Assembly (NCBI RefSeq): GCF_964194025.1 | Contig: NC_134471.1 | Coordinates: forward strand, 66,588,001-66,652,000 | Direction of reading: 5' to 3' | From: Convolutriloba macropyga | Lineage: Eukaryota | DNA length: 64,000 nucleotides | Notes under the pieces: generated by a model | What the model was told of the DNA's origin: nothing | Databases searched by the model: none | What the model saw: the letters and a program-made list of their open reading frames with translations, nothing else | Translations under genes and position numbers: made by a program | In this document: positions 5,201-52,906 of the stretch, piece after piece | Layout: every line of letters begins with the position of its first letter | How positions within the stretch are numbered: the first letter of the stretch is position 1

Positions 5201-8200
5201 CACAAGTTTAAATTAGACACTTCGACTTTAAAAATTTTCACCTGATATACTTAACTGACCAAAATAATTCGAAAAAAAGAACTCCAACAATTATTTGCAT
5301 TATCTCCTAAATTTTACCCTGGATTTCTTTTGCAAAAACCAAATTAACTCTCGAAAAATCATTCCAATGGTTGCCCTGAATGCTTGCCTGCCAATTTTTT
5401 GATCTAAAACTCTACTTCTATAATAACAAACAACCAAAATTTCCTTTCAGTTTCTTTTAATTTCAATTCTTTATGCAGTCAACAGCCTCAAGGATTTATT
5501 TGATACTGTCGTGGCGCCTAGCATGTCTGGTAATTCTGCATAAAATTCAAAACCCTTGCAGAATTATATCTTTAAAAAATTAATTTTTAATTATAAAAAT
5601 ATATTTTGCGACCTTTCGCAAAAGAAAAATAATTGGTAAATCTGATTTCTTTTCCCATACAGTCTGCTTCAATTTTCCCTGCCATATGCTTGGCAAAAAA
5701 GTTTCCTTCACTTTTAGCTTGTTTCCTCTTCTTGTTGTTGGTTATCATCAGCTCGCAAACAAACAATTTTCTAACTAATTCCTTGGAGAAATACTTCGAA
5801 GCAGAATTTAAGTTTTTCCTTTCTCTTTTCTTCCTCTGTTTTTTGCTAGATGAACCATTTTACAATTCCTGGAAACTAAAATAATCCTATCAACGTGTGG
5901 TTATTTACAAGGAACACATAGTCATTATTTTTCATACTAACTGGGCATTTAGTACTTCAATTTAAGTGTTTTTGGGAAGAATTCCGAACAAGAATCACTG
6001 GTTTTCTCTAAGTCTCTTCTTCTTTTTTCTGCTATTATCAAAGTGCATTAATTGCATACAATAACCTCTGTACCTCATTCTTTGTTTTTCTGACAATTTT
6101 ATGACTTTGCAAAGCAAGTTCCGCTTTTTGGTTTTTTTAATATATTAATTGGATTTCACTCCAACAAGTTGGTTCTGATTATTCACTCAGCAAATATACT
6201 CTAGGTTAGATCCCAAATTTTACAAACTAATTAGTCTTTCAAAAGGTTCAATGTAAGTTTCAACTTGCTTTTATTAGCCAATTCTACCATCACTAAAGCA
6301 AGTGTTTATTTTAAGGATTTTTTTTACAAATTATGTTTTCTCATTTTCTGCCAATTTTCTCTGCTGTTAACAGCTCTTGTGGAAAGAAGTGACAATTTCG
6401 GGTAAGAATACTGGGGAAAAGTGCAGATTGTGCAGCATTGATTAGATGGGAGAAAACAGCTCCTTCCTGTTCTGAAATTTTTTTGATTTTATTCCAGGAT
6501 CCTGTTTGATTTCACACTCTCCATACTCGATTTCTTAGTAACATCCCTTTATGAAACCAAAAAAATCATACATGATGCCTGCAAGTTTTCATATATGACC
6601 CCAGTATAAGGTTAAAAAAATCATCGATAAACCATTCCCCGGGCCGAAGAATTTGGCCGAAACTATGTAAGATCAGCGGCAACTAGCGTTGACAAGTTGG
6701 AAAATACACCGCAAATTTCTTACATAATTTTGCGTTGATTGCGTTGAATTTAAAGACAAAAACCAACGCAAAGATATGTAAGGAATGGTGATGAATTTTC
6801 CAACTTGTCAACGCTAGTTGCCGCTGATCTTACATATTTAACGTAGAATTTAGCGTAGATCTTACATAACTAGCGTTGAATTTAGCGTAGATCTTACATA
6901 ATTAGCGCTGAAATTAGCGTAGATCTTACATATTTTTGCGTTGAATTTAGCGTTGATCTTACAAAAAATCAAAGCGTTCACTTGAACTATTAACCTCCAA
7001 TTGCGTATGGGACTCGAACTACTGACCTCCAACTGCGTATGGGACTCGAACTACCATTGTGCCACAATACTTTGGTTTCCTTGAGAGCCGCAATACTTAT
7101 AAAGCGTAGATCTTACATATTCAGCGTTGAATTTAGCGTAGATCTTACACGTTTCGCGTTGAATTTAGCCGAGATCTTACATAAATTTAACGTATTCAAC
7201 GCATTTACCATGTGAGGCGTACTGGGAAAAATTTAATTTTTTTTAACGTTTGGAAAAAAATTTCAATTCCTAAAATGGTCTCAAATGGTTTTTGCACCGC
7301 AAGAGAGCACTCAAAGATTATTTTTTGCTGACTTCATTTTTCTCACTTCTGCAGTATAGGGGCCGAAACAGTAAAAAAAATCGAAAAATTTGAAATGGTA
7401 AAATGGTCTGAATTGGATTTTGTGACCTCATGTTTTTCACCTTTGCAATATAGGGTTCGAAACAGTGAAAAAAAATGATTTTACAAATAAAAAAAACGCA
7501 ATTTTGCGATGAACTCTTGCGTAGATCTTACATATTTAGCGTTGAATTTTAGCGTAGATCTTACATAAACTCAACCCATAATTCAACGCATTCAACGCCA
7601 ATCTTACATGTTTTGCGTTGAATTTTGGCGTAGATGTTACATACTTAGCGTTGAATTTTAGCGTAGATCTTATACAATTTCAACGCAAAATTTGTAAGAT
7701 TGGCGTTTAATGCGTTGAATTTGTGTAAGATCTACGCTAAAATTCAACGCGAAATATGTAACATCTATGCCAAAATTAAACGCAAAACATGTAAGATTGG
7801 CGTTGAATGCGTTGAATTATGCGTTGATTTTATGTAAGATCTACGCAAATTTCAACGCTAAATATGTAAGATCTACGATAAAATTCAACGCTAATTATGT
7901 AAGATCTACGCAAAAAAATCAACGCAAAATATGTAAGATTGGCGTTGAATGCGTTGAATTTATGTAAGATCCACGCTAAATTCAACGCAAAATATGTAAG
8001 ATATACGCTAAAATTCAACGATAAACATGTAAGATCTACGCCAAAATTCAACGCAAAATTATGTAAGATTGGCGTTGAATGCGTTGAATTTATGTAAGAT
8101 ATACGCTCAAGCGTAGATCTTACATAAATTTAACGCATTCAACGCCAATCTTACTAAATTTTGCGTTTTTTAGCGTTGACACCTGGGCCCGGGTCATGAA

Positions 8201-37265: not shown

Positions 37266-39004
37266 CGGTCGATAAACAAGTAGATTGAATTAGTCGTTAA
37301 ACCAATTCTTCAATTTAGGCCAATACTTCAAAAAGTACCAATTTGAAAATTTCGAATATCGCATAACCAGATGTTAAAATTTACGTTTCGTGCCTTTACA
37401 TTGGAATGCGCTGGGCTATTTTAAAAGTGTAAATTTGACGAAAATTATGTGTTGTGGAAGCACAGTCACCAGATCGAGCCTTCTGATTAGATAGTCGACT
37501 TCCAACTTTCTTACTGGCAACTGTGAGATTCACAGAAATTAGGACGTTGAAGGGGCGTGGAACAATTGAGTTATTTGTAGTTGCCACGAAATCCCTCGAA
37601 TTTTGTTGCCAGAAACATATCGGTTCTATGCTTCGAAATAGTTATCGGATGCAGTCAAAAGCTCAACTGGTAGAATATCTGATTTTTAAAGAGGAAATTT
37701 TTTCACACGAGGCAAGCTTCATTTTACAGTTGGTTTGTCAGTTCAAAAGTAATATTGCACTGCGAATCCGATTCTGGAGAAACTTATTTGATGGTTAATT
37801 TTGGTAAAACCCAGCTAATTGACATAATCGCTTTAGCCAAAAAACGAGAACTTTTCCAGCTGATCATAGAGTCTCTTAATACTTTTGATTGATGTATTGA
37901 CAGCGCTAAAATGTGCTGACAGTAATAATAAAATTAGACGGGATTTGACTGATTGAAAGAACTAGTGAATAAAGAATGTATGCGTTAATGATGCTGTCTT
38001 AATGAATAATAATATCTCTACAGATGTTTAGTGCTTAGATTAATGTGGTTGATGAAAACGTACTCTATTCGGTGTAATTAATGGTCGTCAACTCCATCCT
38101 ATCTGCTGCACCACGAGGGCATTCCAATTAAGTATTCAAGTGGAATGAACTGGATTGGTGATTCAACAGAATAGGGGGGAGAATACAGCTTCTAATTGGT
38201 TGAATTAAGTACAACAAATAATCCGCACCCCCCCCCCCCCCCCGGACTCCCCACCGCCTCCCCCAAATCAGCCATATTATTCGATGGTTGATGATGATCG
38301 TTGATGATGATGATGATCGCTCTTTATGATGATGATGGTCGTTTGATTCGGTGTCATCTGACATCCAAGTAATAAAAGAGGGAAGTTGTTGAAGCGAACC
38401 TCACTTTTCGTCGAACTGGTGCCTGTTTCTAGCAGACCTGAAACCGTCAATCAAGATCGCAACAAAGGTATATTCAATTGGGAACATATCAGTAACAAAT
38501 ATTGAATTAAATCTCGTATTTCAGATATTTTTGTGGTTCGAAGATTTTGAACCCGGCAACTACAGGAAACTGATCACGAAGAGGAAGAAAGTGTTAGCTG
38601 TTCTTATTCTTTTTGTTTAATGAAAAAGAAAACGCCAAGTGCCCGCACAAAAACATGCATAAATGTATTTTTTAATAGCGGCCTCAGGTTCTCAGCCGAT
38701 ACCCTGGCAAATTCGAGCGCAGTTTAAGGAAATCAATTCTAATTTTGAGTGACGAGACTAACAAAACCTCTTTGAAAACATTGTTTTACTGTGATAAATC
38801 TCTAGGTGCTGATCTATTGGAATACTGAATAAACGCTGCAATTATCTTTTGATGAAGGTTTTCCGGCAGATTTTTGCTACACTGTAATCTTAAAGCGTGC
38901 CGCGTAAAAGCAGTTTTAAAACAATTTAAACAACCAAAGTGCGTTAAGGTGGGTGAAAAATGACTATCAATATATCTGCTGTATTAGATATCTCAAATGT
39001 CCGA

Positions 39005-40093
39005 CGCCGTTTTGCTATCATCAGGCTTCGTCCCGCTTTGAGGTCAATCAAGCACAATTGTATCTTATGTCGTAAGCGTAGTGCAGACACAGTGAAGCCA
39101 ATGATGGCGGATCTACCAGTCGAGCGTCTGTCCTATGGTAATCCACCTTTCTCCAACTCAGGGATAGACAACTTCAGACCGTTCTATGTCGCCGTCAAGC
39201 GTTCAACTGAGAAGCGCTGGGGGTTCGTTTTCACGTACCTTACAACTCGAGCGCTCCACATTGAAGTCGTAAATTCTATGGATACCACCTCTTGTGTTAT
39301 GGGCATAGAAAGATTCATCGCACGAAGAGGGACACCGCAAGTTCTATGGTCAGGCAATGGAACAAACTTTACTGGTGCGGTGAAAGAGTTGTCAGCTTGC
39401 TTTAAAGCTTTGAACCAACGTGCGATTGCCAGCAAAATGTCACAGAAAGGTATTAAGTGGCACTTTAACCCTCCATCTTCCCCCCATCATGGTGGTTCGT
39501 GGGAACCCATGGTACTGAGTGTCAAACGGACATTCTACGCTGTACTCGGTAACCGCCGGTTGACTGATGAGGTGCTCCAAACAACATTCTGTCTAGTTGA
39601 AATGACGCTCAACAACCGGCCGCTCACTTCTGTAAGCAATGATCCATCAGAAATGGACGCAATTACTCCAAATCTTTTCCTTCTCGGGTTCCGTCCTAGT
39701 ATGCTCCCTTCATTAGTTGAAAGTGACGATTTTGATCACAGAAAGCGTTACGTCCGGGCGCAATCAAATGCCGACTCAATTTGGAAACGATGGTTGGATG
39801 AGTACGTACCGGCTTTGAGTCGTCGTAGTAAATGGTCAAAATCCGCTTCAGATGAGCTAAAAACAGGAGATCTGGTATGGCTCACCGAAGACTCATCTCC
39901 CAGAGGCCATTTTCCTCTAGGACGTATCGAAAAACTTCGCTTTGGTGACGACGGCTTTGTTCGTTCCGCCGAAATAAGAACTAAGTCCCGTAACTATGTT
40001 AGACCCGTTGTAAAATTGATTCCAGTTTTTGGTACACCACTTTTGGGGCCGGAGGATGTTGTGAAAACAAATAAATGTAAGCGAGAAATGTAA
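39005..40093 (+). pseudogene. Bel/Pao integrase, 5'-truncated, second catalytic Asp lost
   Basis: C..C, GID, F...TTRA.H.E, FIARRG.P and GG.WE motifs are present. SDNGTNF reads SGNGTNF. The first 14-15 codons of ORF 38960 come from flanking DNA. Confidence 0.88.
40045..40056 (+). promoter_or_regulatory. Polypurine tract before LTR1
   Basis: ggggccggagga lies immediately before TGTT. Confidence 0.8.
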
Positions 40094-40638
40094 GCAAGAG
40101 GTGTATGCAGCGACAAAAGTAAGTGAGTATATTTAAATTGTATGCGTAACAAAACAAGTAACCATAGCAGAGTTAGTATAGCACTGTACTCTCAATCTAT
40201 GGACCGGTGGTTCGAGCCCCCACCATGTCGAACCTTAGGAAGCAAACTCCGTATTCTAATACATGTGCCTTGAGCAACGAACCGTTTGAGAGCGGTTTTA
40301 AGCTAAACTAGCCCAATTTAGACTAAGATGACTTAGATATAAATTTCTTAGACTAACAACACGCATTGAATGGTTTAACTCTAAGGCCAAAGCAATGCCA
40401 AATTACGTCACACATGAGCTGAATTGACCTTTATTGGCTCACAAAAGGCTAACAGGTCTTGTCTAGCCTTTTTGCCGCCAGTGTTACTTTAGATATCTTA
40501 TGTATACGTTCGAGGAGGTTTGTTATGTGTGATCGAATAAGAGCTTATCGTTGAAAATACGTATTGTTATCTTGAATAAAGATTGTTCTATGACCGTTTT
40601 TCTGTAGTTCCAGTCTTAGACGTTATCTAGCTCGAATA
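40057..40638 (+). repeat. LTR1 (582 bp)
   Basis: Direct repeat of 51361-51942 with roughly 22 substitutions counted by eye. Starts TGTT, ends GAATA, and has AATAAA near the 3' end. Confidence 0.93.
40158..40280 (+). promoter_or_regulatory. tRNA/SINE-like Pol III A-box and B-box module inside the LTR (also at 51462-51584)
   Basis: A-box-like TAGCAGAGTTAG (40165) and B-box GGTTCGAGCCC (40209) sit at tRNA spacing. T-arm-like stem GGTGG/CCACC is present. There is no acceptor stem. Confidence 0.55.
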
Positions 40639-40641
40639 TTT

Positions 40642-40658
40642 TGGTCCGCAGACACGGA
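40642..40658 (+). promoter_or_regulatory. Primer-binding site (tRNA-Tyr-like)
   Basis: TGGTCCGCAGACACGGA lies 3 nt after LTR1 and is 15/17 identical to the tRNA complement at 49451. Confidence 0.85.
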
Positions 40659-40696: not shown

Positions 40697-41418
40697 AACT
40701 TCTGGCGCACAGAGGCTGGGTCAGTGACCGCTATCGGAACTTTTGAGACACAGAGGCTGGGTCAGTGACTACTATTGGAACTTCTGGTGCACAGAGGCTG
40801 GGTCAGTGATTACTATTGGAACTTCTGGCGCAGAGAGGCTGGGTCAGTGACCGCTATCGGCACTTTTGAGACACAGAGGCTGGGTCAGTGACTACTATTG
40901 GAACTTTTGGCGCACAGAGGCTGGGTCAGTGATTACTATTCGAACTATTGGCGCACAGCGGCTGGGTCAGTGACTACTATTGGTACTTTTGGCGCACAGA
41001 GGCTGGGTCAGTGACTACCATTGGAACTCTTGGCGCACAGAGGCTGGGTCAGTGACTACTATTGAAACTTCTGGCGCACAGAGGCTGGGTCAGTGACTAC
41101 TATTGGAACTTCTGGTGCACAGAGGCTTGGTCAGTGACTACCACTGGAACTTCGGGCACACAGAGGCTGGGTCAGTGACTACTATTGGCACTTCTGGCGC
41201 AGACAGGCTGGGTCAGTGACTACTATTGGAACTTCTGGTGCACAGAGGCTGGGTCAGTGATTACTATTGGAACTTCTGGCACACAGAGGCTGGGTCAGTG
41301 ACTTTTATTGGTACTTCTGGTGCACAGAGCCCGGGTGAGTGACTGCTATTGGTCTTGTGGCGAACAGAAGCTGGGTCAGTGACTGTTTTTGGTCTTCTGG
41401 CACACAGAGGATTGGTCA
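40697..41418. repeat. 41-bp minisatellite, about 17 copies, in the element's 5' leader
   Basis: Unit cacagaggctgggtcagtgactactattggaacttctggcg; period 41 (40711 to 40752). Confidence 0.95.
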
Positions 41419-41570: not shown

Positions 41571-44500
41571 TTGAGTGCTCAATTAGCCGAATAACTTCGG
41601 GTGCTCAATTAGCCGAAAAACTTGGGTGCTCAATTAGCCGAATAACTTGGGTACTCAATTAGTCGAATAACTTTGGGTGCTCAATTAGCCGAATAACTTT
41701 GGTCGATCAATTAGCCGAATAACTTTGGTGCTCAATTAGCCGAATAACTTTGGGTGCTCAATAAGCCGAATAACTTGGGTGCTCAATTAGCCGAATAACT
41801 TTGGGTGCTCAATTAGCCGAATAACTTTGGGTGCTCAATTAGCCGAATAACTTGGGTGCTCAATTAGCCGAATAACTTTGGGTGCTCAATTAGCCGAATA
41901 ACTTTGGTCGATCAATTAGCCGAATAACTTGGGTGCTCAATTAGCCGAATAACTTTGGGTGCTCAATAAGCCGAATAACTTGGGTGCTCAATTAGCCGAA
42001 TAACTTTGGGTGCTCAATTAGCCGAATAATTTGAGTGCTCAATTAGCCGAATAACTTTGATTGCTCAATTAGCCGAATAACTTTGGGTGCTCAATTAGCC
42101 GAATAACTTTGGTTAATCGATTAGCCGAATAACTTGGTTGATCAATTAGCCGAATAACTTTGTTGCTCAATTAGCCGAATAACTTTGGGTGCTCAATTAG
42201 CCGAATAACTTTGGGTGCTCAATTAGCCGAATAACTTTGGGTGCTCAATTAGCCGAATAAATTTGGTTGCTCAATTAGCCGAATAACTTGGGTGCTCAAT
42301 TAGCCGAATAACTTTGGGCGCTCAATTAGCCGATTAACTTCCGATGCTCAATTAGCCGAATAACTTGGGTGCTCAATTAGCCGAATAACTTGGGTGCTCA
42401 ATTAGCCGAATAACTTTGGGCGCTCAATTAGCCGAATAACTTTGGTCGATCAATTAGCCGAATAACTTGGGTGCTCAATTAGCCGAATAACTTTGGGTGC
42501 TAAATTAGCCGAATAACTTTGATTGCTCAATTAGCCGAATAACTTGGGTGCTCAATTAGCCGAATAACTTCGGGTGCTCAATAAGCCGAATAACTTGTGT
42601 GCTCAATTAGCCCAATAACTTTGGGTGCTGAATTAGCCGAATAAGTTTGGTCGATCAATTAGCCGAATAACTTGGGTGCTCAATTAGCCGAATAACTTTG
42701 GTCGATCAATTAGCCGAATAACTTTGGTGCTCAATTAGCCGAATAACTTTGGGTGCTCAATAAGCCGAATAACTTGGGTGCTCAATTAGCCGAATAACTT
42801 TGGGTGCTCAATTAGCCGAATAACTTTGGGTGCTCAATTAGCCGAATAACTTGGGTGCTCAATTAGCCGAATAACTTTGGGTGCTCAATTAGCCGAATAA
42901 CTTTGGTCGATCAATTAGCCGAATAACTTGGGTGCTCAATTAGCCGAATAACTTTGGGTGCTCAATAAGCCGAATAACTTGGGTGCTCAATTAGCCGAAT
43001 AACTTTGGGTGCTCAATTAGCCGAATAATTTGAGTGCTCAATTAGCCGAATAACTTTGATTGCTCAATTAGCCGAATAACTTTGGGTGCTCAATTAGCCG
43101 AATAACTTTGGTTAATCAATTAGCCGAATAACTTTGGTGCTCAATTAGCCGAATAATTTGAGTGCTCAATTAGCCGAATAACTTTGATTGCTCAATTAGC
43201 CGAATAACTTTGGGTGCTCAATTAGCCGAATAACTTGGGTGCTCAATTAGCCGAATAACTTCGGGTGCTCAATAAGCCGAATAACTTGTGTGCTCAATTA
43301 GCCCAATAACTTTGGGTGCTGAATTAGCCGAATAAGTTTGGTCGATCAATTAGCCGAATAACTTGGGTGCTCAATTAGCCGAATAACTTTGGTCGATCAA
43401 TTAGCCGAATAACTTTGGTGCTCAATTAGCCGAATAACTTTGGGTGCTCAATAAGCCGAATAACTTGGGTGCTCAATTAGCCGAATAACTTTGGGTGCTC
43501 AATTAGCCGAATAACTTTGGGTGCTCAATTAGCCGAATAACTTGGGTGCTCAATTAGCCGAATAACTTTGGGTGCTCAATTAGCCGAATAACTTTGGTCG
43601 ATCAATTAGCCGAATAACTTGGGTGCTCAATTAGCCGAATAACTTTGGGTGCTCAATAAGCCGAATAACTTGGGTGCTCAATTAGCCGAATAACTTTGGG
43701 TGCTCAATTAGCCGAATAATTTGAGTGCTCAATTAGCCGAATAACTTTGATTGCTCAATTAGCCGAATAACTTTGGGTGCTCAATTAGCCGAATAACTTT
43801 GGTTAATCAATTAGCCGAATAACTTGGTTGATCAATTAGCCGAATAACTTTGTTGCTCAATTAGCCGAATAACTTTGGGTGCTCAATTAGCCGAATAACT
43901 TTGGGTGCTCAATTAGCCGAATAACTTTGGGTGCTCAATTAGCCGAATAAATTTGGTTGCTCAATTAGCCGAATAACTTGGGTGCTCAATTAGCCGAATA
44001 ACTTTGGGCGCTCAATTAGCCGATTAACTTCCGATGCTCAATTAGCCGAATAACTTGGGTGCTCAATTAGCCGAATAACTTGGGTGCTCAATTAGCCGAA
44101 TAACTTTGGGCGCTCAATTAGCCGAATAACTTTGGTCGATCAATTAGCCGAATAACTTGGGTGCTCAATTAGCCGAATAACTTTGGGTGCTAAATTAGCC
44201 GAATAACTTTGATTGCTCAATTAGCCGAATAACTTGGGTGCTCAATTAGCCGAATAACTTCGGGTGCTCAATAAGCCGAATAACTTGTGTGCTCAATTAG
44301 CCCAATAACTTTGGGTGCTGAATTAGCCGAATAAGATTGGTCGATCAATTAGCCGAATAACTTGGGTGCTCAATTAGCCGAATAACTTTGGGTGCTCAAT
44401 TAGCCGAATAACTTTGGGTGCTCAATAGGCCGAATAACTTGGGTGCTCAATTAGCCGAATAACTTTGGGTGCTCAATTAGCCGAATAACTTTGGTCGATC

Positions 44501-47500
44501 AATTAGCCGAATAACTTGGGAGCTCAATTAGCCGAATAACTTTGGGTGCTCAATAAGCCGAATAACTTGGGTGCTAATTTAGCCGAATAACTTTGGGTGC
44601 TCAATTAGTCGAATAACTTTGGATGCTCAATTAGCCGAATAACTTTGATTGCTCAATTAGCCGAATAACTTTGGGTGCTCAATTAGCCGAATAACCTTGG
44701 TTGATCAATTAGCCGAATAACTTGGGTGCTCAATTAGCCGAATAACTTTGGGTGCTCAATTAGCCGAATGATTTTGGGTGCTCAATTAGCCGAATAACTT
44801 TGGGTGCTCAATTAGCCGAATAACTTTGGTTGCTCCGTTAGCCGAATAATTTGGGTGCTCAATTAGCCGAATAACTTTGGGCGCTCAATTAGCCGATTAA
44901 CTTCGGGTGCTCAATTAGCCGAATAACTTGGGTGCTCAATTAGCCGAATAACTTGGGTGCTCAATTAGCCGAATAAATTTGGGCGCTCAATTAACCGAAT
45001 AACTTTGGTCGATCAATTAGCCGAATAACTTGGGTGCTCAATTAGCCGAATAACTTTGGGTGCTCAATAAGCCGAATAACTTGGGTGCTGAATTAGCCGA
45101 ATAACTTTGGGTGCTCAATTAGCCGAATAACTTTGGGTGCTCAATAAGCCGAATAACTTTGATTGCTCAATTAGCCGAATAACTTTGCGTGCTAAATTAG
45201 CCGAATAACTTTGGTTGATCAATTAGCCGAATAACTTGGGTGCTCAATTAGCCGAATAATTTTGGGTGCTCAATTAGCCGAATAACTTTGGGTGCTCAAT
45301 TAGCCGAATAACTTTGGTTGCTCCGTTAGCCGAATAACTTGGGTGCTCAATTAGCCGAATAAATTTGGGCGCTCAATTAGCCGATTAACTTCGGGTGCTC
45401 AATTAGCCGAATAACTTGGGTGCTCAACTAGCCGAATAACTTGGGTGCTCAATTAGCCGAATAACTTTGGGCGCTCAATTAACCGAATAACTTTGGTCGA
45501 TCAATTAGCCGAATAACTTGGGTGCTCAATTAGCCGAATAACTTTGGGTGCTCAATAAGCCGAATAACTTTGGGTGCTCAATTAGCAGAATAACTTTGGG
45601 TGCTCAATTAGCCGAATAAGATTGGTCGATCAATTAGCCGAATAACTTGGGTGCTCAATTAGCCGAATAACTTTGGGTGCTCAATTAGCCGAATAACTTT
45701 GGGTGCTCAATAGGCCGAATAACTTGGGTGCTCAATTAGCCGAATAACTTTGGGTGCTCAATTAGCCGAATAACTTTGGTCGATCAATTAGCCGAATAAC
45801 TTGGGAGCTCAATTAGCCGAATAACTTTGGGTGCTCAATAAGCCGAATAACTTGGGTGCTAATTTAGCCGAATAACTTTGGGTGCTCAATTAGTCGAATA
45901 ACTTTGGATGCTCAATTAGCCGAATAACTTTGATTGCTCAATTAGCCGAATAACTTTGGGTGCTCAATTAGCCGAATAACCTTGGTTGATCAATTAGCCG
46001 AATAACTTGGGTGCTCAATTAGCCGAATAACTTTGGGTGCTCAATTAGCCGAATGATTTTGGGTGCTCAATTAGCCGAATAACTTTGGGTGCTCAATTAG
46101 CCGAATAACTTTGGTTGCTCCGTTAGCCGAATAATTTGGGTGCTCAATTAGCCGAATAACTTTGGGCGCTCAATTAGCCGATTAACTTCGGGTGCTCAAT
46201 TAGCCGAATAACTTGGGTGCTCAATTAGCCGAATAACTTGGGTGCTCAATTAGCCGAATAAATTTGGGCGCTCAATTAACCGAATAACTTTGGTCGATCA
46301 ATTAGCCGAATAACTTGGGTGCTCAATTAGCCGAATAACTTTGGGTGCTCAATAAGCCGAATAACTTGGGTGCTGAATTAGCCGAATAACTTTGGGTGCT
46401 CAATTAGCCGAATAACTTTGGGTGCTCAATAAGCCGAATAACTTTGATTGCTCAATTAGCCGAATAACTTTGCGTGCTAAATTAGCCGAATAACTTTGGT
46501 TGATCAATTAGCCGAATAACTTGGGTGCTCAATTAGCCGAATAATTTTGGGTGCTCAATTAGCCGAATAACTTTGGGTGCTCAATTAGCCGAATAACTTT
46601 GGTTGCTCCGTTAGCCGAATAACTTGGGTGCTCAATTAGCCGAATAAATTTGGGCGCTCAATTAGCCGATTAACTTCGGGTGCTCAATTAGCCGAATAAC
46701 TTGGGTGCTCAACTAGCCGAATAACTTGGGTGCTCAATTAGCCGAATAACTTTGGGCGCTCAATTAACCGAATAACTTTGGTCGATCAATTAGCCGAATA
46801 ACTTGGGTGCTCAATTAGCCGAATAACTTTGGGTGCTCAATAAGCCGAATAACTTTGGGTGCTCAATTAGCCGAATAACTTTGGGTGCTCAATTAGCCGA
46901 ATAACTTTGGGTGCTCAATAAGCCGATTAACTTTGATTGCTCAATTAGCCGAATAACTTTGCGTGCTAAATTAACCGAATAACTTTGGTTGATCAATTAG
47001 CCGAATAACTTGGGTGCTCAATTAGCCGAATAACTTTGGGTGCTCAATTAGCCGAATAACTTTGGGTGCTCAATTAGCCGAATAACTTTGGGTGCTCAAT
47101 AAGCCGATTAACTTTGATTGCTCAATTAGCCGAATAACTTTGCGTGCTAAATTAACCGAATAACTTTGGTTGATCAATTAGCCGAATAACTTGGGTGCTC
47201 AATTAGCCGAATAACTTTGGGTGCTCAATTAGCCGAATAACTTGAGTGCTCAATTAGCCGAATAACTTGGGTGCTCAATTAGCCGAATAACTTTGGGTGC
47301 TCAATTAGCCGAATAACTTTGGTCGATCAATTAGCCGAATAACTTGGGTGCTCAATTAGCCGAATAACTTTGGTTGCTCAATTAGCCGAATAACTTGGGT
47401 GCTCAATTAGCCGAATAACATTAGGCGCTCAATTAGCCGAAAAATCTCCTAGTGTTCAATTAGCCGAGAAATTTCCTAGTGTTCAATTAGCCGAAAATTT

Positions 47501-47524
47501 TCCTTGTGTTCAATTAGCCGAAAA
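41571..47524. repeat. 25-26-bp satellite array, about 230 copies, with higher-order duplications
   Basis: Unit gctcaattagccgaataact(t)tgggt. Variant monomers recur at fixed long periods. Confidence 0.97.
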
Positions 47525-49453
47525 GGAACCCCCAGCGCTTCTCAGCTGAACGCTTGACGGCGACATAGAACAGTCCGAAGTAGTCTATCCCTGAGTTGGA
47601 GAAAGGTGGATTACCATAGGACAGACGCTCGACTGGTAGATCCGCCATCATTGGCTTCACTGTGTCTGCACTACGCTTACGACATAAGATACAATTGTGC
47701 TTGATTGACCTCAAAGCGGGACGAAGCCTGATGATAGCAAAACGGCGCTGGATGAAAGCTCGTAAGAATTCAACACCTTCGTGGTGGTTTTCCAGGTGTG
47801 CCTTCAAAAGAAACAATTTTACTGCAGGATGACGGCTATCTAAATTAATGGGGTGTTTGAGATCATAGTCCGCCTCGATCAAACGTTTCAATCGGCCGGT
47901 TGATCTAATCAAGGCATTTGGGCCAATGAGGGGCGAGAATGGTGCGATGCGAACCTTCTTGTTAATTTGTTTACCATCAAAAAGAAGTTTTTGTTCAACT
48001 GGGAATGATTCCAACTGCATGAGAAACTGAAGCTTAGCCTCAGCAACTCGAAGTTCATCAGGATTGCAAATATTGCGGTCTGGTGTACGATATGAAGCAT
48101 GTTTGGGGAGTATACGGAGGAGATAGGCTGTATTTCGAACTAGTTTGTTGAAAGAACTGTACCTATCAAAGTCAAATATTTTCTCAGGTTGCATTGTATT
48201 GCCGGCAAACGCCATTTGTGGCTCAGTTACATCCTTTTGTGAATTGTGCAAGAATTGTTTTGTTTGAAGGCTATCTCTTTTGCTTGTACTGGGTTGAAAA
48301 GGGAAGTGAGAAGTCAAGAAAAAGCTTGGCCCTTATAGCCAACTGCTTGTTCTTAAGTTTTCAGCTGACATGCCTCTTGTTCCAGCATCTGCTGGGTTGT
48401 CTGCAAATGGCACATGGAACCATTGATCAACAGTTGTTGACTCTAGAATTTCAGAAACTCTGTTAGCAACAAATATAGGTTGCTTGTCAAGTGAACCCAG
48501 CCACTGCAGGACAGTGTTGCTATCAGTCCTCATAAAGACTCTGCTCAAAGGAATTGTTAGGGCTTTAATTATGTCAACTTTCAATCGTGTCGCCAAGAGG
48601 GCGGCCTGTAACTCTAGTTTAGGAACTGTTAAGCACTTCATGGGGGCAACCCTCGCTTTCCCTAGAACAAAAGCAATTTCAGAGCGTCCACTACTTCCTG
48701 ATTTTACTCTGACCCTGAAGCAACTGAGCTAAAAATATCCTGAAAGCTGTCTACGAAAACGTGGAGCTCCAGTTGATCAAAAACCCCGGAGAAGAAAATT
48801 CTAGGGATAGTTAAGTTGCATAAGTTAGGCAGATCTGAACTCCAGATTTTGAACCTATTCATCATTTCAATGGGCAGGGTGTTGTCCCAGTTTTGGCCAC
48901 TCAGTCTCCAAATGTCCTTCAACAATAGTCGAGCAGTAATCGTGAGTGACGCGACCAACCCAATGGGGTCGAAGATTTTTGCTACTAAGCTAAAGACTAA
49001 GCGTTGCGTGACTTTGTTGCTTTCGTTACACTTCGTGCCTCGACTAACGACTAAGGTATCCTTTCGATGGTCCCATTTTAGACCCAGAACATATGAAGAA
49101 CCTTCTTCATCAGAAACTGAGATCACTTTAGGTTTGCATAAATGATCATTGTTTTCGATTTCATCCAGTAAGTGTGGTGTGTTACTTATAAATTTTGTTA
49201 GCTTGAATCCTCCTAACTTCAATAACTCAACTAACTTCTTGGACCTACTTAGTGCTTCGTGTGGTGTTTCTAGAGAATCCAAATAGTCGTCCATATAATA
49301 TGTATCTAATACAGCTTGCGCAGCATCGGGGAACTTACGAATGTTGTCTTTTGCTGTTTTCTGAAGCGCAAAGTTCGCGCAAGTTGGCGAATCCTTCGCA
49401 CCGAATATATGTCGGCTGTATTGGTATACCATCACTTCTGATGATGGGTCTGG
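47520..49453 (-). pseudogene. Inverted Bel/Pao pol segment (RT to integrase N-terminal part)
   Basis: ORFs 48704-49435, 48333-48641 and 47514-48317 are consecutive pol pieces separated by a frameshift and a stop. Confidence 0.93.
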
Positions 49454-49479
49454 TCCGCCGACCCGGACACGAACCAGGG
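49451..49479 (-). tRNA. Reverse-transcribed 3' fragment (positions 48-76, with CCA) of a tRNA-Tyr-like primer; not a tRNA gene
   Basis: The minus strand reads C CCTGG TTCGTGT CCGGG TCGGCGG A CCA: a 5-bp T-stem, 7-nt T-loop, 7-nt acceptor strand, discriminator A and CCA. G72/A73 fit eukaryotic tRNA-Tyr identity. Confidence 0.82.
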
Positions 49480-51388
49480 TCCAAGAAGTTAGTTGAGTTA
49501 TTGAAGTTAGGAGGATTCAAGCTAACAAAAATTATAAGTAACACACCACACTTACTGGATGAAATTGAAAGCAATGATCATTTATGCCAACCTAAAGTGA
49601 TCATAGTTTCTGATGAAGAAGCTTAGTCGTTAGTCGAGGCACGAAGTGCGACGAAAGCAACAAAGTCACGCAACGCTTAGTCCTCAGCTTAGTAGCAAAA
49701 GTCTTCGACCCCATTGGGTTGGTCGCGCCATTCACGGTTACTGTTCGACTATTGTTGAAGGATATTTGGAGACTGAGTGGCCAAAACTGGGACAACATCC
49801 TGCCCATTGAAATGATGAATAGGTTCAAAGTCTGGAGTTCAGATGTGCCTAAATTATGCAACTTAACTATCCCTAGAAGTTTCTTCTCCGCGGCTTTTGA
49901 TCAACTGGAGCTCCACGTTTTCGTAGACAGCTCTCAGGATGTTTTTAGCTCAGTTGCCTTCCTCAGGGCCAGAGTAAAATCAGGAAGTAGTGGACGCAAT
50001 GAAATTGCTTTTGTTCTAGGGAAAGCGAGGGTTGCCCCCATGAAGTGCTTAACAGTTCCTAAACTAGAGTTACAGGCCGCCCTCTTGGCGACACGATTGA
50101 AAGTTGACATAATTAAAGTCCTAACATCTCCTTTGAGCAGAGTCTTTATGTGGACTGATAGCACTACTGTCCTGCAGGGCCTGGGTTCACTTGACAAGCA
50201 ACCTATATTTGTTACTAACAGAGTTTCCGAAATTCTAGAGTCAACAACTGTTGATCAATGGTTCCATGTGCCAACTGCAGACAACCCAGCAGATGCTGGA
50301 ACAAGAAGCATGTCAGCTGAAAACTTAAGAACAATCAGTTGGCTAACAGGGCCAAGCATTTTGCTGACTTCTCACTTCCTTTTTCATCCCAGCACAAGCA
50401 TAAGAGATAGCCTTCAAACAAAACCATCCTTGCACAATTCACAAAAGGGTGTAACTGAGCCAAAAATGGCGTTTGCCGGCAATACAATGCAACCTGAGAA
50501 ATTTTTTGAATTTGATAGGTACAGTTCTTTCAACAAACCAGTTCGAAAGACAGCCTATCTCCTCCGTATACTCCCCAAACATGCTTCATAGCGTACACCA
50601 GACCGCAATTTTTGCAATCCTGATGAACTTCGAGTAGCTGAGGCTAAGCTTCAGTTTCTCATGCAGTTGGAATCTTTCCCAGTTGAACAAAAACTTATTT
50701 TTGATGGTAAACAAATTGACAAGAAGAGTCGCATCGCACCATTCTCGCCCTTCATTGGCCCAAATGCCTTGGTTAGATCAACCGGCTGATTGAAACGTTT
50801 GATCGAGGCGGACTATGACCTCAAACAACCCATTATTTTAGATAGCCGTCATCCTGCAGTAAAATTGTTTCTTTTGAAGGCGCACCTGGAAAACCACCAC
50901 GAAGGTGTTGAATTCTTACGAGCTTTCATCCAGCGCCGTTTTACTATCATTAGGTTTCGTCCCGCTTTGAGGTCAGTAAAACACAATTGTATCTTATGTC
51001 GTAAGCGTAGTGCAGACACAGTGAAGCCAATGATGGCGGATCTACCAGTCGAGCGTCTGTCCTATGATCAAATGCCGACTCAATTTGGAAACGATGGTTG
51101 GATGAGTACATACCGGCTCTGAATCCTCGCAGTAAATGGTCAAAATCCGCTTCAGATGAGCTTAAATCAGGAAATCTGGTATGGCTCGCCGAAGACTCAT
51201 CTCCCCGAGGCCATTTTCCTCTAGGACATATCGAAAAACTTCGCTTTGGTGACGAAGGCTTTGCCCGTTCCGCCGAAATTAGGACTAAGTCCGGTAACTA
51301 TGTCAGACCCGTTGTAGAATTGGTTCCAGGTTTTGGTACACCATTTTTGGGGCGGGAGGATGTTGTGAAAACAAATAAATGTAAGTGA
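49478..51388 (+). pseudogene. Sense Bel/Pao pol segment (RT end, RNase H, integrase with DDE core deleted)
   Basis: ORFs 49719-50591, 50790-51122 and 51098-51388. There is a short deletion at 49621 and a 625-bp deletion at 51066 relative to the 39138-39762 copy. Confidence 0.93.
51349..51360 (+). promoter_or_regulatory. Polypurine tract before LTR2
   Basis: ggggcgggagga lies immediately before TGTT. Confidence 0.8.
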
Positions 51389-51942
51389 GAAATGTAACCG
51401 AGAATTGTATGCAGCGACAAAAGTAAGTGAGTATATTTAAATTGTATTCGTAACAAAATAAGTAACCATAGCAGAGTTAGTATAGCACTGTACTCTCAAT
51501 CTATGGACCGGTGGTTCGAGCCCCCACCATGTCGAACCTTAGGAAGCAAAATCCGTATTCTAATACATGTGCCTTGAGCAACGAACCGTTTGAGAGCGGT
51601 TTTAAGCTAAACTAGCCCGATTTAGACTAAGATGACTTGGATATAAAATTCTTAGACTAACAACAGGCATTGAATGGTTCAACTCTAAGGCCAAAGCAAG
51701 GTCAAATTACGTCACACATGAGCTGAATTGACCTTTATTGGCTCACAAAAGGCTAACAGGTCTTGTCTAGCCTTTTTGCCGCCAGTTTTACTTTAGATGT
51801 CTTATGTATACGTTCGAGGAGGAGTGTTAAGTGTGATCGAATAAGAGCTTATCGTTGAAAATACGTATTGTTATCTTGAATAAAGATGGTTCTATTACCG
51901 TTTTTCTGTAGTTCCAGTCTTAGACGTTATCTAGCTCGAATA
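51361..51942 (+). repeat. LTR2 (582 bp)
   Basis: Direct repeat of 40057-40638; similarity stops after ctcgaata. Confidence 0.93.
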
Positions 51943-52554
51943 TATCTCGGAGATTTCTACATACATACTATACATCTAAAGCTCAGATACAACTTTATAG
52001 CCCATCTATGGCTTCTAGATGTTAGATATCTCAATATATCTGCTCTGAACAATATCTCATAAGGAACCTGCTATAATTTCACGGGACGTTGTGTGCAATT
52101 TTTATTAGCAGCCTCAGCTTCTCAGCTGGCTATGATAGCGCTCATATTTTTTACAATTCAAAGAATTGGATTTGTATTGGGGGGCTGTCTTCTTTTTAAG
52201 TTCTGTTTACACATTTTTCTGATTTTTAAAGCATTTTGAAGCGAAGCTAAAAAGCGAGTGGTTTTACGGCGTGGAAATTTTAGCTCTAATTTTAAAGTAG
52301 AGTGAGAAAATGGTTTTTGAAAAGAATTTCGTTTTCCCGCTAGTACTTTTTTTCTCATGCAGCATTTTGTTTTTGATTGTGTCATTGATGTATTTTAGAA
52401 TCTCTTCTCTTTCACCCCCGGTGTTTTTTATGACCCCCTGTTACAAATTGCATGTTGTTATATAGCACGTTAATATGTAAGAAAATAGCACGTGCGCCTG
52501 GGGGGTCATAAAAAATTGATGTTCACTAAGCTGTGGGGGGGGGCGAAGAGAGTA

Positions 52555-52906
52555 NNNNNNNNNNNNNNNNNNNNNNNNNNNNNNNNNNNNNNNNNNNNNN
52601 NNNNNNNNNNNNNNNNNNNNNNNNNNNNNNNNNNNNNNNNNNNNNNNNNNNNNNNNNNNNNNNNNNNNNNNNNNNNNNNNNNNNNNNNNNNNNNNNNNNN
52701 NNNNNNNNACAAAATTTAGAGTTTTGTGAACGAAATCAANNNNNNNNNNNNNNNNNNNNNNNNNNNNNNNNNNNNNNNNNNNNNNNNNNNNNNNNNNNNN
52801 NNNNNNNNNNNNNNNNNNNNNNNNNNNNNNNNNNNNNNNNNNNNNNNNNNNNNNNNNNNNNNNNNNNNNNNNNNNNNNNNNNNNNNNNNNNNNNNNNNNN
52901 NNNNNN
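52555..52906. other. Assembly gaps (N runs 52555-52708 and 52740-52906)
   Basis: N characters in the sequence. Confidence 0.99.

What the first reader, a model, noticed from the sequence alone, without database searches (positions are those of the whole stretch)
49451..49479. Fossil of aberrant reverse transcription: mature tRNA primer 3' end copied into the inversion hinge, with an m1A58-type misread
Seen: the plus strand TGGTCCGCCGACCCGGAC-A-CGAACCAGGG is the complement of tRNA positions 76 to 48, including CCA and a complete T-arm. Its first 17 nt match the element's own PBS at 15/17. On the minus strand the CCA runs directly into pol coding sequence (CCA GAC CCA TCA TCA GAA GTG ATG GTA). 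The base at tRNA position 58 (49469) reads T rather than the near-invariant A. Established: eukaryotic CCA is added post-transcriptionally, copying of the primer normally stops at m1A58 giving an 18-nt PBS, and read-through of m1A often records A-to-T mismatches. Inference: the tRNA primed at an ectopic site on the antisense strand of pol. The second strand then read 11 nt past the normal stop and jumped to sense pol at a short gg/agg overlap, fixing an RNA-modification signature in the genome. The insert would also act as a second, perfect internal PBS.
Basis: partly seen in the sequence, partly recalled or inferred. Interest (0 to 1): 0.9.

Follow-up and report, generated by a model that had tools for sequence, protein, structure and literature searches.

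The report
tRNA copy at retrotransposon hairpin hinge
A dead BEL/Pao retrotransposon carries a 27-29 base DNA copy of the end of a mature host tRNA at the turning point of an inverted duplication of its pol gene: a well-supported fossil of a reverse-transcription accident, which may also record a tRNA base modification.

Summary
Window 49451-49479 (+) is the complement of tRNA positions 76-48. It has CCA, discriminator A73, the acceptor 3' strand, a 5-bp T stem and a T loop. It matches the element's own primer-binding site (40642-40658) at 15/17. On the minus strand CCA abuts pol, and position 58 reads T.

The element is a BEL/Pao LTR retrotransposon, present only as three broken or truncated pol pieces, two LTRs and a PBS/leader with large tandem arrays. 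Relatives carry ordinary reverse-transcriptase sequence where this copy has the tRNA piece, so the 29-mer is not pol.

It sits in the 232-nt loop of a roughly 1.6-kb inverted duplication whose arms differ by 5.1%. The far junction is a 2-nt GG/CC snap-back.

Best reading: reverse transcriptase copied the packaged primer tRNA past position 58, then folded back and copied its own strand.

The m1A58 misread is plausible, because a later A-to-T change at that one site has odds of about 0.6%. It rests on one base, and the tRNA gene could not be found.

Verdict: partly supported; a new variant of known processes; interest about 0.5.

The parts
39005..40093 (+). pol fragment A (integrase core C-terminal part plus DUF5641 tail). 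5'-truncated, with no stop or frameshift inside.
   Evidence: Pfam rve and DUF5641. Homology to B and C starts at 39005. Matches residues about 1570-1911 of a 1913-aa relative in one frame.
40129..40639 (+). LTR copy 1, directly after fragment A and directly before the PBS.
   Evidence: The 3' end is fixed by the end of homology with LTR copy 2 and by the PBS 2 nt further on. The 5' end is inferred from a purine-rich tract and 5-nt terminal inverted repeats. LTR-LTR divergence is 3.3%.
40642..40658 (+). Primer-binding site of the element; 15/17 identical to the start of the hinge 29-mer.
40697..41418 (+). 41-bp tandem array (17.7 units) in the leader; each unit has a TGG-led, PBS-like motif.
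41571..47467 (+). 26-bp tandem array (about 230 units, 5.9 kb). Its end joins pol fragment B at a 5-nt TTTTC microhomology.
47520..49450 (-). pol fragment B (reverse transcriptase from between motifs A and B, through the Peptidase_A17/RNase H region, to the integrase zinc domain). Truncated at both ends; at least 1 frameshift and 1 in-frame stop.
49246..49477 (.). Unique loop between the inverted arms: 205 nt of pol present only in B, plus the tRNA-derived piece.
   Evidence: Inverted-repeat arms with 232 nt between them (I4).
49451..49479 (-). tRNA-derived piece. The minus strand reads tRNA positions 48-76 including CCA; T at position 58 (49469). Bases 49478-49479 are shared with pol.
49244..49245 (+). 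CC that pairs with the terminal GG (49478-49479) in the snap-back. Copying from 49243 downward gives exactly the sequence from 49480 onward.
   Evidence: read directly, I4.
49478..51397 (+). pol fragment C (from just after RT motif C to the end of pol). 5'-truncated; at least 2 frameshifts, 2 in-frame stops and 1 internal deletion of about 0.6 kb relative to A.
51433..51943 (+). LTR copy 2. It ends 2 nt short of the LTR-to-PBS spacer seen in copy 1, then unrelated AT-rich flank follows.

Best explanation
The 27-29 nt at 49451-49479 are a DNA copy, made by the element's reverse transcriptase, of the 3' end of the mature host tRNA that this BEL/Pao family uses as primer.

Core, which I hold at about 0.75: during one aberrant reverse transcription a growing strand was making antisense pol. 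It left pol inside the RT-coding region and continued on A76 of the tRNA. It copied CCA, the acceptor strand and the T arm, passed position 58 (recorded as T), and stopped at position 48-50. Its 3' GG then paired with a CC 232 nt back on the same strand, and it copied itself. This produced the inverted duplication of about 1.6 kb. The product became fixed in the genome and has since decayed: the arms differ by 5.1%.

Step I prefer but cannot show, at about 0.4: the tRNA was a free, packaged molecule used as a template after an end-to-end template jump. That is the same architecture as small-RNA/LINE chimeric retrocopies.

Shown: the sequence identities, the junctions, the microhomologies, and that the piece is not pol. 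Inferred: the enzyme, the order of events, and where they happened.
For: tRNA features and the PBS match. CCA is added after transcription in eukaryotes (established knowledge), and the element's PBS locus has no T-arm sequence after its 17 nt. The source must therefore be a mature tRNA copied from RNA. Relatives with upstream sequence, 55-87% identical to the query, have RT motif-A sequence where the window has 9 tRNA-coded residues. In the 150 best of 18,973 library hits, homology never starts before query residue 6-11, although many hits have about 1000 residues upstream. The snap-back geometry is exact. A second polarity switch, array to fragment B, has a 5-nt microhomology. This shows a molecule made by repeated strand switching. 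Arm divergence of 5.1% with 3 indels rules out a palindromic-read artefact. Precedents: a mature tRNA with CCA inside a mosquito LTR element (PMC3286476); complex LTR elements made by template switching (PMC1950507); small-RNA/LINE chimeras (PMC4476161); cDNA running on past tRNA position 54 without an RT stop at m1A58 or m5Um54 (PMC8599865).
Against: No tRNA gene with this 3' half could be retrieved, so the source tRNA is inferred. Only one copy of the junction is known, and no reads were available. The pol/A76 junction shows no visible microhomology. The intact pol DNA upstream of it was not available, so a jump and ectopic priming cannot be told apart. The complex has an LTR end on the right only, its left end lies inside pol, and no target-site duplication was seen. 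The mode of fixation is therefore unknown. Fragments A and B are closer to each other (2.2%) than B is to C (5.1%), which a single simultaneous origin does not predict. The isolated 29-mer does not fold preferentially into the T arm, and Rfam gives no partial tRNA hit. Both are expected for a fragment, but neither adds support.
Confidence: 0.45

Rival explanations
1. One reading: the tRNA annealed at an ectopic site on minus-strand pol DNA and primed a sense (plus) strand. When that strand was later copied back to its 5' end, synthesis ran into the still-attached tRNA primer, past position 58 to about 48, and then jumped at GG.
For: CCA abuts pol with no extra base, as expected at a primer-DNA joint. 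Fragment A has the order pol-LTR-PBS-leader, which is that of a plus strand after the second strand transfer. The array/B junction is a 5-nt snap-back onto an A-type strand, and A and B are the closest pair. B could therefore be a self-copy that ran to the 5' end of its template, which would explain why antisense pol stops exactly where the tRNA begins.
Against: It needs priming on DNA at a site with no evident complementarity. It needs later loss of about 1.7 kb plus the primer from the 5' end of A. I could not find a precedent in the literature searched.
Confidence: 0.3
2. A chromosomal DNA-level rearrangement of an integrated element (fold-back inversion, microhomology-mediated repair or replication template switching), with a stray tRNA cDNA captured as filler at the break.
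For: Short microhomologies (2 and 5 nt) and fold-back geometry are also typical of repair-based inverted duplications. The locus is otherwise rearranged and embedded in arrays. The left end is not an LTR end.
Against: The filler is the element's own primer tRNA species, with CCA, joined base-to-base to pol. Reverse transcriptase, this tRNA and pol cDNA are together in the particle, not at a chromosomal break. A separate reverse-transcription step would still be needed.
Confidence: 0.12
3. On the misread part only: T at position 58 is an ordinary later substitution, or the tRNA lacked m1A58 and was copied faithfully before mutating, or the gene itself has T58.
For: The copies have diverged by about 2.5% per site per lineage, so about 0.7 substitutions are expected somewhere in 29 nt. 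The PBS differs from the 29-mer at 2 of 17 sites, so decay in these short pieces is real. The tRNA gene was not seen.
Against: The odds that this particular site changed A to T are about 0.6%. Read-through of m1A commonly leaves a mismatch, and in the m1A-G context T and G dominate (PMC4787781). A58 is near-invariant in eukaryotic cytosolic tRNAs (established knowledge).
Confidence: 0.3
4. An assembly artefact: a chimeric join or a palindromic long read.
For: Inverted duplications with a short spacer are a known artefact class, and the region is repeat-rich.
Against: The arms differ by 5.1% with 3 indels, and artefactual palindromes are near-identical. A misjoin would fall in shared sequence, not at a 27-nt tRNA copy flanked by exact junctions.
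Confidence: 0.04

Closest known systems
Plus-strand strong-stop copying of the tRNA primer (PBS regeneration) in retroviruses and LTR retrotransposons, with m1A58 as the stop (PMC8599865)
   Same: Reverse transcriptase copies the primer tRNA from A76 inward. The same tRNA species as the element's PBS is involved. Position 58 is the critical site.
   Different: The copy is attached to pol, not to U5. It runs 9-11 nt past the stop. It ends in a snap-back instead of the second strand transfer.
Chimeric retrocopies made by template switching of a retroelement reverse transcriptase onto small RNAs (U6/LINE-1 and similar; PMC4476161, bioRxiv 10.1101/2025.02.02.635956)
   Same: The 3' end of a small cellular RNA is fused, in the same orientation, upstream of a 5'-truncated retroelement sequence, with little or no microhomology.
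   Different: Those are LINE-1 products of target-primed synthesis carrying whole small RNAs. Here it is an LTR (BEL/Pao) element, only 27-29 nt of the RNA are present, and a fold-back follows.
cqgypsy_1 of Culex quinquefasciatus: two mature tRNAs with CCA inserted next to the 5' LTR (PMC3286476)
   Same: Mature, CCA-bearing tRNA sequence longer than a PBS is incorporated into an insect LTR retrotransposon, and its authors attributed it to reverse transcription.
   Different: That case has whole tRNAs, sits at the LTR/PBS border, is flanked by a 26-nt duplication, and has no inverted duplication of coding sequence.
Complex LTR retrotransposon insertions created by abnormal template switching (Sabot and Schulman 2007, PMC1950507)
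   Same: Multi-part elements sharing an LTR (here pol-LTR-PBS) are explained by switching during reverse transcription and insertion as one unit.
   Different: The plant cases are direct fusions of two parents. No tRNA insert or inverted arms are described in the abstract read.
Self-primed (snap-back) hairpin cDNA, a classic in vitro behaviour of reverse transcriptases (own knowledge, not checked in a paper here)
   Same: The 3' end of a nascent strand folds back on a 2-nt match and copies itself, giving inverted arms around a loop.
   Different: Here the result is fixed in a genome, and the folding end is a tRNA copy.

Membership tests
BEL/Pao LTR retrotransposon (Belpaoviridae-type element) | pol with the family's Peptidase_A17 region, integrase core and DUF5641 tail, in the order RT - RNase H region - integrase | tested here: met
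   Pfam hits PF05380, PF00665, PF18701 and PF17921. There are 676 relatives at E<=1e-10, nearly all with PF05380. Order confirmed against a 1913-aa relative.
BEL/Pao LTR retrotransposon (Belpaoviridae-type element) | Two LTRs, a PBS after the 5' LTR, gag and protease, and a target-site duplication | tested here: inconclusive
   Two LTR copies (3.3% apart) and a PBS are present. No gag, protease or N-terminal RT occurs anywhere in the window. No duplication was seen at the ends. These are rearranged fragments, not a complete element.
Mature cytosolic tRNA 3' end | 3' CCA, discriminator, 7-nt acceptor strand, 5-bp T stem, and G53 T54 T55 C56 R57 with C61 | tested here: met
   Read. The motif is unique in the window, with 0.023 expected per random window.
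Mature cytosolic tRNA 3' end | A at position 58 | tested here: not met
   T at position 58 (49469). This is the point of the misread hypothesis.
Mature cytosolic tRNA 3' end | A matching tRNA gene in the host, without encoded CCA | not testable with these tools
   No tRNA gene in the window. Two metagenome scans and one prokaryote-genome scan gave only two non-tRNA matches. Text searches for the strings were empty.
   Positions 72 and 73 read G and A. The identity rule is from my own knowledge. The anticodon is not present, so the isotype is not proven. The BEL/Pao element Achilles has a tRNA-Tyr PBS (PMC4580426).
m1A58 reverse-transcription signature | A non-A base at position 58 of the kind seen for m1A followed by G (T or G, rarely C) | tested here: met
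   T at 58 and G at 59. Mismatch spectrum from PMC4787781.
m1A58 reverse-transcription signature | The template tRNA has A58 and carries the methyl group; the mismatch is not a later mutation | not testable with these tools
   There is only a background estimate: about 2.5% substitutions per site and about 0.6% for A to T at one given site.
Snap-back (fold-back) inverted duplication | Inverted arms, a unique loop, and microhomology where the 3' end re-anneals, with the copy in register from that point | tested here: met
   Arms of about 1.6 kb, a 232-nt loop, and GG/CC pairing with exact register.
Template-switch chimeric retrocopy | The exact 3' terminus of a small RNA joined to an internal position of a 5'-truncated retroelement, in the same orientation | tested here: met
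   A76 abuts pol on the minus strand. Relatives continue upstream with RT sequence.

The most novel reading that the evidence does not exclude
This is a heritable genomic record that a BEL/Pao reverse transcriptase read through m1A58 of its primer tRNA in the germ line, writing an RNA-modification mismatch into DNA. It would also show that a multiply snapped-back hairpin cDNA, possibly started by ectopic tRNA priming of a plus strand, can be fixed in a chromosome as one unit. A further possibility is that the 1.6-kb inverted repeat is transcribed into a hairpin RNA that feeds small-RNA silencing of the family.
Probability: 0.3. Interest if true: 0.65.

Novelty: new variant of a known kind. Interest (0 to 1): 0.5.

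Why it matters
Copying of the primer tRNA and its arrest at m1A58 are known mainly from retroviruses and from in vitro work. Natural, germ-line-fixed products of failures of that step are rarely documented, and none that I found concerns BEL/Pao elements.

If the tRNA gene proves to have A58, this locus would show three things in vivo for an insect-type LTR element:
- read-through of the modified base, leaving the expected mismatch;
- use of the packaged tRNA beyond its primer role;
- snap-back synthesis as a source of the inverted TE duplications that populate repeat-rich regions.

It also gives a search image, CCA-bearing tRNA 3' ends longer than 18 nt inside retroelement coding sequence. 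A genome-wide survey with that image could turn one anecdote into a measured class.

Tried and rejected
1. ARAGORN on the window and on fetched loci found no tRNA gene.
2. Rfam on the hinge, including a stretch cut so that the fragment starts at the sequence end, gave no tRNA hit, only noise. Rfam on the LTR also gave nothing.
3. The metagenome scan with N at position 58 gave 0 hits. With four N it gave one non-tRNA hit, L001. The prokaryote-genome scan gave one hit in a bacterial MAG outside any tRNA, taken as chance.
4. Full-text and supplement searches for the PBS and tRNA strings in several variants gave nothing relevant.
5. The BEL/Pao survey paper has no PBS data.
6. Folding the isolated 29-mer gave z = 0.22 and does not single out the T arm, so it is uninformative.
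7. A search for more diverged BEL/Pao copies in the window, to read intact pol at the junction, found none.
8. Flank comparison for a target-site duplication found only 13-14 nt motif matches in permuted order.
9. A look-up of the neighbouring ABC-transporter gene to name the host returned an unnamed ENA contig. The host stays unidentified beyond 'metazoan, insect-like'.

Rejected readings: normal pol sequence; derivation from the element's own PBS locus, which lacks the T-arm bases; a tRNA-derived SINE or tRNA gene, because of the CCA and the PBS identity; integrase autointegration, because the joint is not at an LTR end.

Full report
**1. Observation**

- With 49451 as tRNA position 76, the minus strand reads a proper tRNA 3' portion: CCA, A73, a 7-nt acceptor strand, and a T stem of five pairs (one G-U).
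- The loop carries G53 T54 T55 C56 G57 and C61.
- Position 58 (49469) is T.
- The first 17 nt recur once in the window with two mismatches, at 40642-40658. Only 0.01 such matches are expected by chance.
- A scan of my own for 'T arm with conserved loop bases, 8 nt, CCA' finds this site alone in 64 kb. The expectation is 0.023 per random window.
- On the minus strand CCA runs straight into in-frame pol codons.

- The last two bases (GG, 49478-49479) are shared with the pol sequence that follows, so 27 nt are unambiguously tRNA.
- The structure is an inverted duplication, not an inversion.

**2. What the surroundings are**

Pfam identifies a BEL/Pao LTR retrotransposon: Peptidase_A17, integrase core, DUF5641 and the integrase zinc domain. 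Self-comparison and sequence reading give this map on the + strand:
- unrelated flank;
- pol fragment A (39005-40093);
- an LTR (about 40129-40639);
- a 2-nt spacer, then the PBS (40642-40658);
- a short leader;
- a 41-bp array (40697-41418) and a 26-bp array of about 230 units (41571-47467);
- pol fragment B on the minus strand (47520-49450);
- the tRNA piece;
- pol fragment C on the plus strand (49478-51397);
- a second LTR (about 51433-51943);
- AT-rich flank.

Against a 1913-aa relative, B covers about residues 1030-1645, C about 1098-1910 and A about 1570-1911.

Break counts:
- A has none but is 5'-truncated.
- B has at least one frameshift and one in-frame stop, and is cut at both ends.
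- C has at least two frameshifts, two in-frame stops and one internal deletion of about 0.6 kb.
- gag, protease and the N-terminal half of RT are absent from the whole window.

The thing is dead.

**3. The 29-mer is not pol**

I searched with the translation that runs from the tRNA piece into fragment B.
- Relatives that have upstream sequence, 55-87% identical to the query, carry the RT motif-A region where the window has nine tRNA-coded residues. Homology begins at the junction.
- In the exhaustive library search (18,973 hits), none of the 150 best aligns before query residue 6-11. Many of them have about 1000 residues upstream of the match.

**4. It must come from a mature tRNA, by way of RNA**

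- Eukaryotic tRNA genes do not encode CCA (established knowledge).
- The element's own PBS locus has only 17 nt of tRNA complement, followed by unrelated leader. It therefore cannot be the source of the T-arm bases.
- The identity with the PBS says it is the family's primer tRNA species, which retroelement particles package (established for retroviruses and Ty elements; inferred here).
- G72 with A73 fits the eukaryotic tyrosine identity set (own knowledge). A BEL/Pao element with a tRNA-Tyr PBS is published (PMC4580426).
- The isotype remains unproven, because I could not retrieve the gene: ARAGORN, two metagenome scans, one prokaryote scan and text searches all failed.

**5. The junctions**

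- Left junction: antisense pol ends at 49450 and the copy starts at A76, with no extra base. Whether one base of microhomology exists cannot be said without intact pol DNA.
- Right junction: the copy ends ...GG. The same strand has CC at 49244-49245, and copying from 49243 downward gives exactly what follows from 49480. That is a snap-back with a 232-nt loop (49246-49477).
- The arms are about 1.6 kb long and differ by 5.1% in substitutions, with three indels. The duplication is therefore old and is not a palindromic-read artefact.
- A second polarity switch, from the 26-bp array into fragment B, sits on a 5-nt TTTTC that is also present at the matching place in fragment A.
- Fragment A has the order pol-LTR-PBS-leader. 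That is the order of a plus strand after the second strand transfer, or of two elements sharing an LTR (PMC1950507).
- The right end of the complex is an LTR end lacking the 2-nt spacer, as after integrase processing. The left end lies inside pol, and I saw no target-site duplication.

**6. Mechanism**

Shown: a strand that reads antisense pol, then the tRNA complement 76 to 48-50, then sense pol in exact snap-back register.

Inferred core (about 0.75): the element's reverse transcriptase made it in one faulty round. It copied the tRNA past the usual stop before position 58 and then self-primed.

Two versions of the first step give the same letters.
- *Template jump.* The growing minus strand jumped from the genomic RNA onto the 3' end of a free packaged tRNA. 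This has the architecture of U6/LINE chimeras (PMC4476161). I prefer it slightly (about 0.4) because switching to the exact 3' end of a small RNA has precedent and needs no pairing.
It gains from the array/B snap-back, and from A and B being the closest pair (2.2% against 5.1%). If B is a self-copy of an A-type plus strand, it would run to that strand's 5' end and into an attached primer. That would explain why pol stops exactly where the tRNA begins. I give it about 0.3.

A chromosomal repair event with a captured tRNA cDNA (about 0.12) and an assembly artefact (about 0.04) are less likely.

The stop at 48-50 could reflect a block at positions 46-47 or the 5' end of a tRNA fragment. Neither can be tested here.

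**7. The m1A58 misread**

- The copies have diverged by about 2.5% per site per lineage. About 0.7 changes are therefore expected somewhere in the 29 nt.
- The odds for an A-to-T change at this one site are about 0.6%.
- Reverse transcriptases that pass m1A often misincorporate. With G as the 3' neighbour, the mismatches are mostly T and G, with little C (PMC4787781). The window has T at 58 and G at 59.

Given a gene with A58, the misread is clearly the better explanation of the T. I put it at about 0.6-0.7 overall, because it is one base in one copy and the gene is unseen.

The suggestion of a 'perfect internal PBS' is not supported. The insert would mismatch the tRNA at position 58, and nothing indicates use.

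**8. Comparison with what is known, and verdict**

Each ingredient is known:
- tRNA primer copying with the m1A58 stop;
- template switching to small RNAs;
- snap-back synthesis;
- complex LTR elements made by switching;
- one mosquito element with whole CCA-bearing tRNAs (PMC3286476).

The combination is a new variant rather than a new kind. It comprises a longer-than-PBS copy of the primer tRNA inside pol, at the hinge of an inverted duplication, in a BEL/Pao element, with a candidate modification mismatch. Interest is about 0.5: a clean, teachable fossil and a usable search image, but a single unverified case.

**9. Limits, steps left out, and a slip**

- The bar on fetching animal viruses may cover an endogenous element of this family.
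- The N runs at 52555-52708 and 52740-52906 were left alone.
- Slip: my first notebook entry and the printed outputs of my scripts contain coordinates that reveal where an internal deletion and indels lie inside a pol fragment of this virus-like element. I noticed this later, have deleted nothing, and do not repeat those places here.

Noticed in passing
window about 40155-40235 and about 51459-51539: Both LTR copies contain a tRNA-like stretch with D-arm-like and T-loop-like motifs. Neither ARAGORN nor Rfam calls it. It could be an older tRNA or SINE capture in U3.
   Followed up: partly
window 40697-41418: A 41-bp tandem array of 17.7 units starts 38 nt after the PBS. Each unit begins with a TGG-led motif that matches the PBS region at about 13 of 20 positions, and the periodicity fades into the LTR end and PBS. 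These may be reiterated PBS-like sites.
   Followed up: partly
window 41571-47467: A 5.9-kb array of a 26-bp unit (about 230 copies, 89% matches) lies between the leader and the inverted pol fragment. Whether it belongs to the element's leader or is a satellite that expanded later is unknown.
   Followed up: no
window 39005-39232 and 47520-47747: A 228-bp inverted overlap of fragments A and B brackets 8.3 kb. The two are identical over roughly the first 165 bp, and all 5 differences fall in the last 63 bp or so. This suggests gene conversion, and the bracketed segment could flip by recombination.
   Followed up: partly
window 38966-38996 and 52021-52044: The left flank next to fragment A and the right flank about 80 nt beyond the second LTR share 13-14 nt motifs in permuted order. 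Both flanks may belong to one short-repeat region, which weakly suggests that the 12.9-kb complex sits there as one unit.
   Followed up: partly
window 19764-23615 (-): An uninterrupted 1283-aa ORF with two ABC_tran domains and an ABC2_membrane_3 domain: an ABCA-type transporter, apparently a host gene without introns over this span. The identical protein is on an unnamed ENA contig.
   Followed up: partly
window 7549-7687 and 7711-7849: A 139-nt inverted repeat, 94% complementary, with a 23-nt spacer. It may be a MITE-like or hairpin element.
   Followed up: no
L002 7612-7636: A verrucomicrobial MAG holds a 25-nt match to the tRNA-piece pattern outside any tRNA gene, taken as chance in GC-rich sequence. 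L001 is likewise a non-tRNA match.
   Followed up: yes
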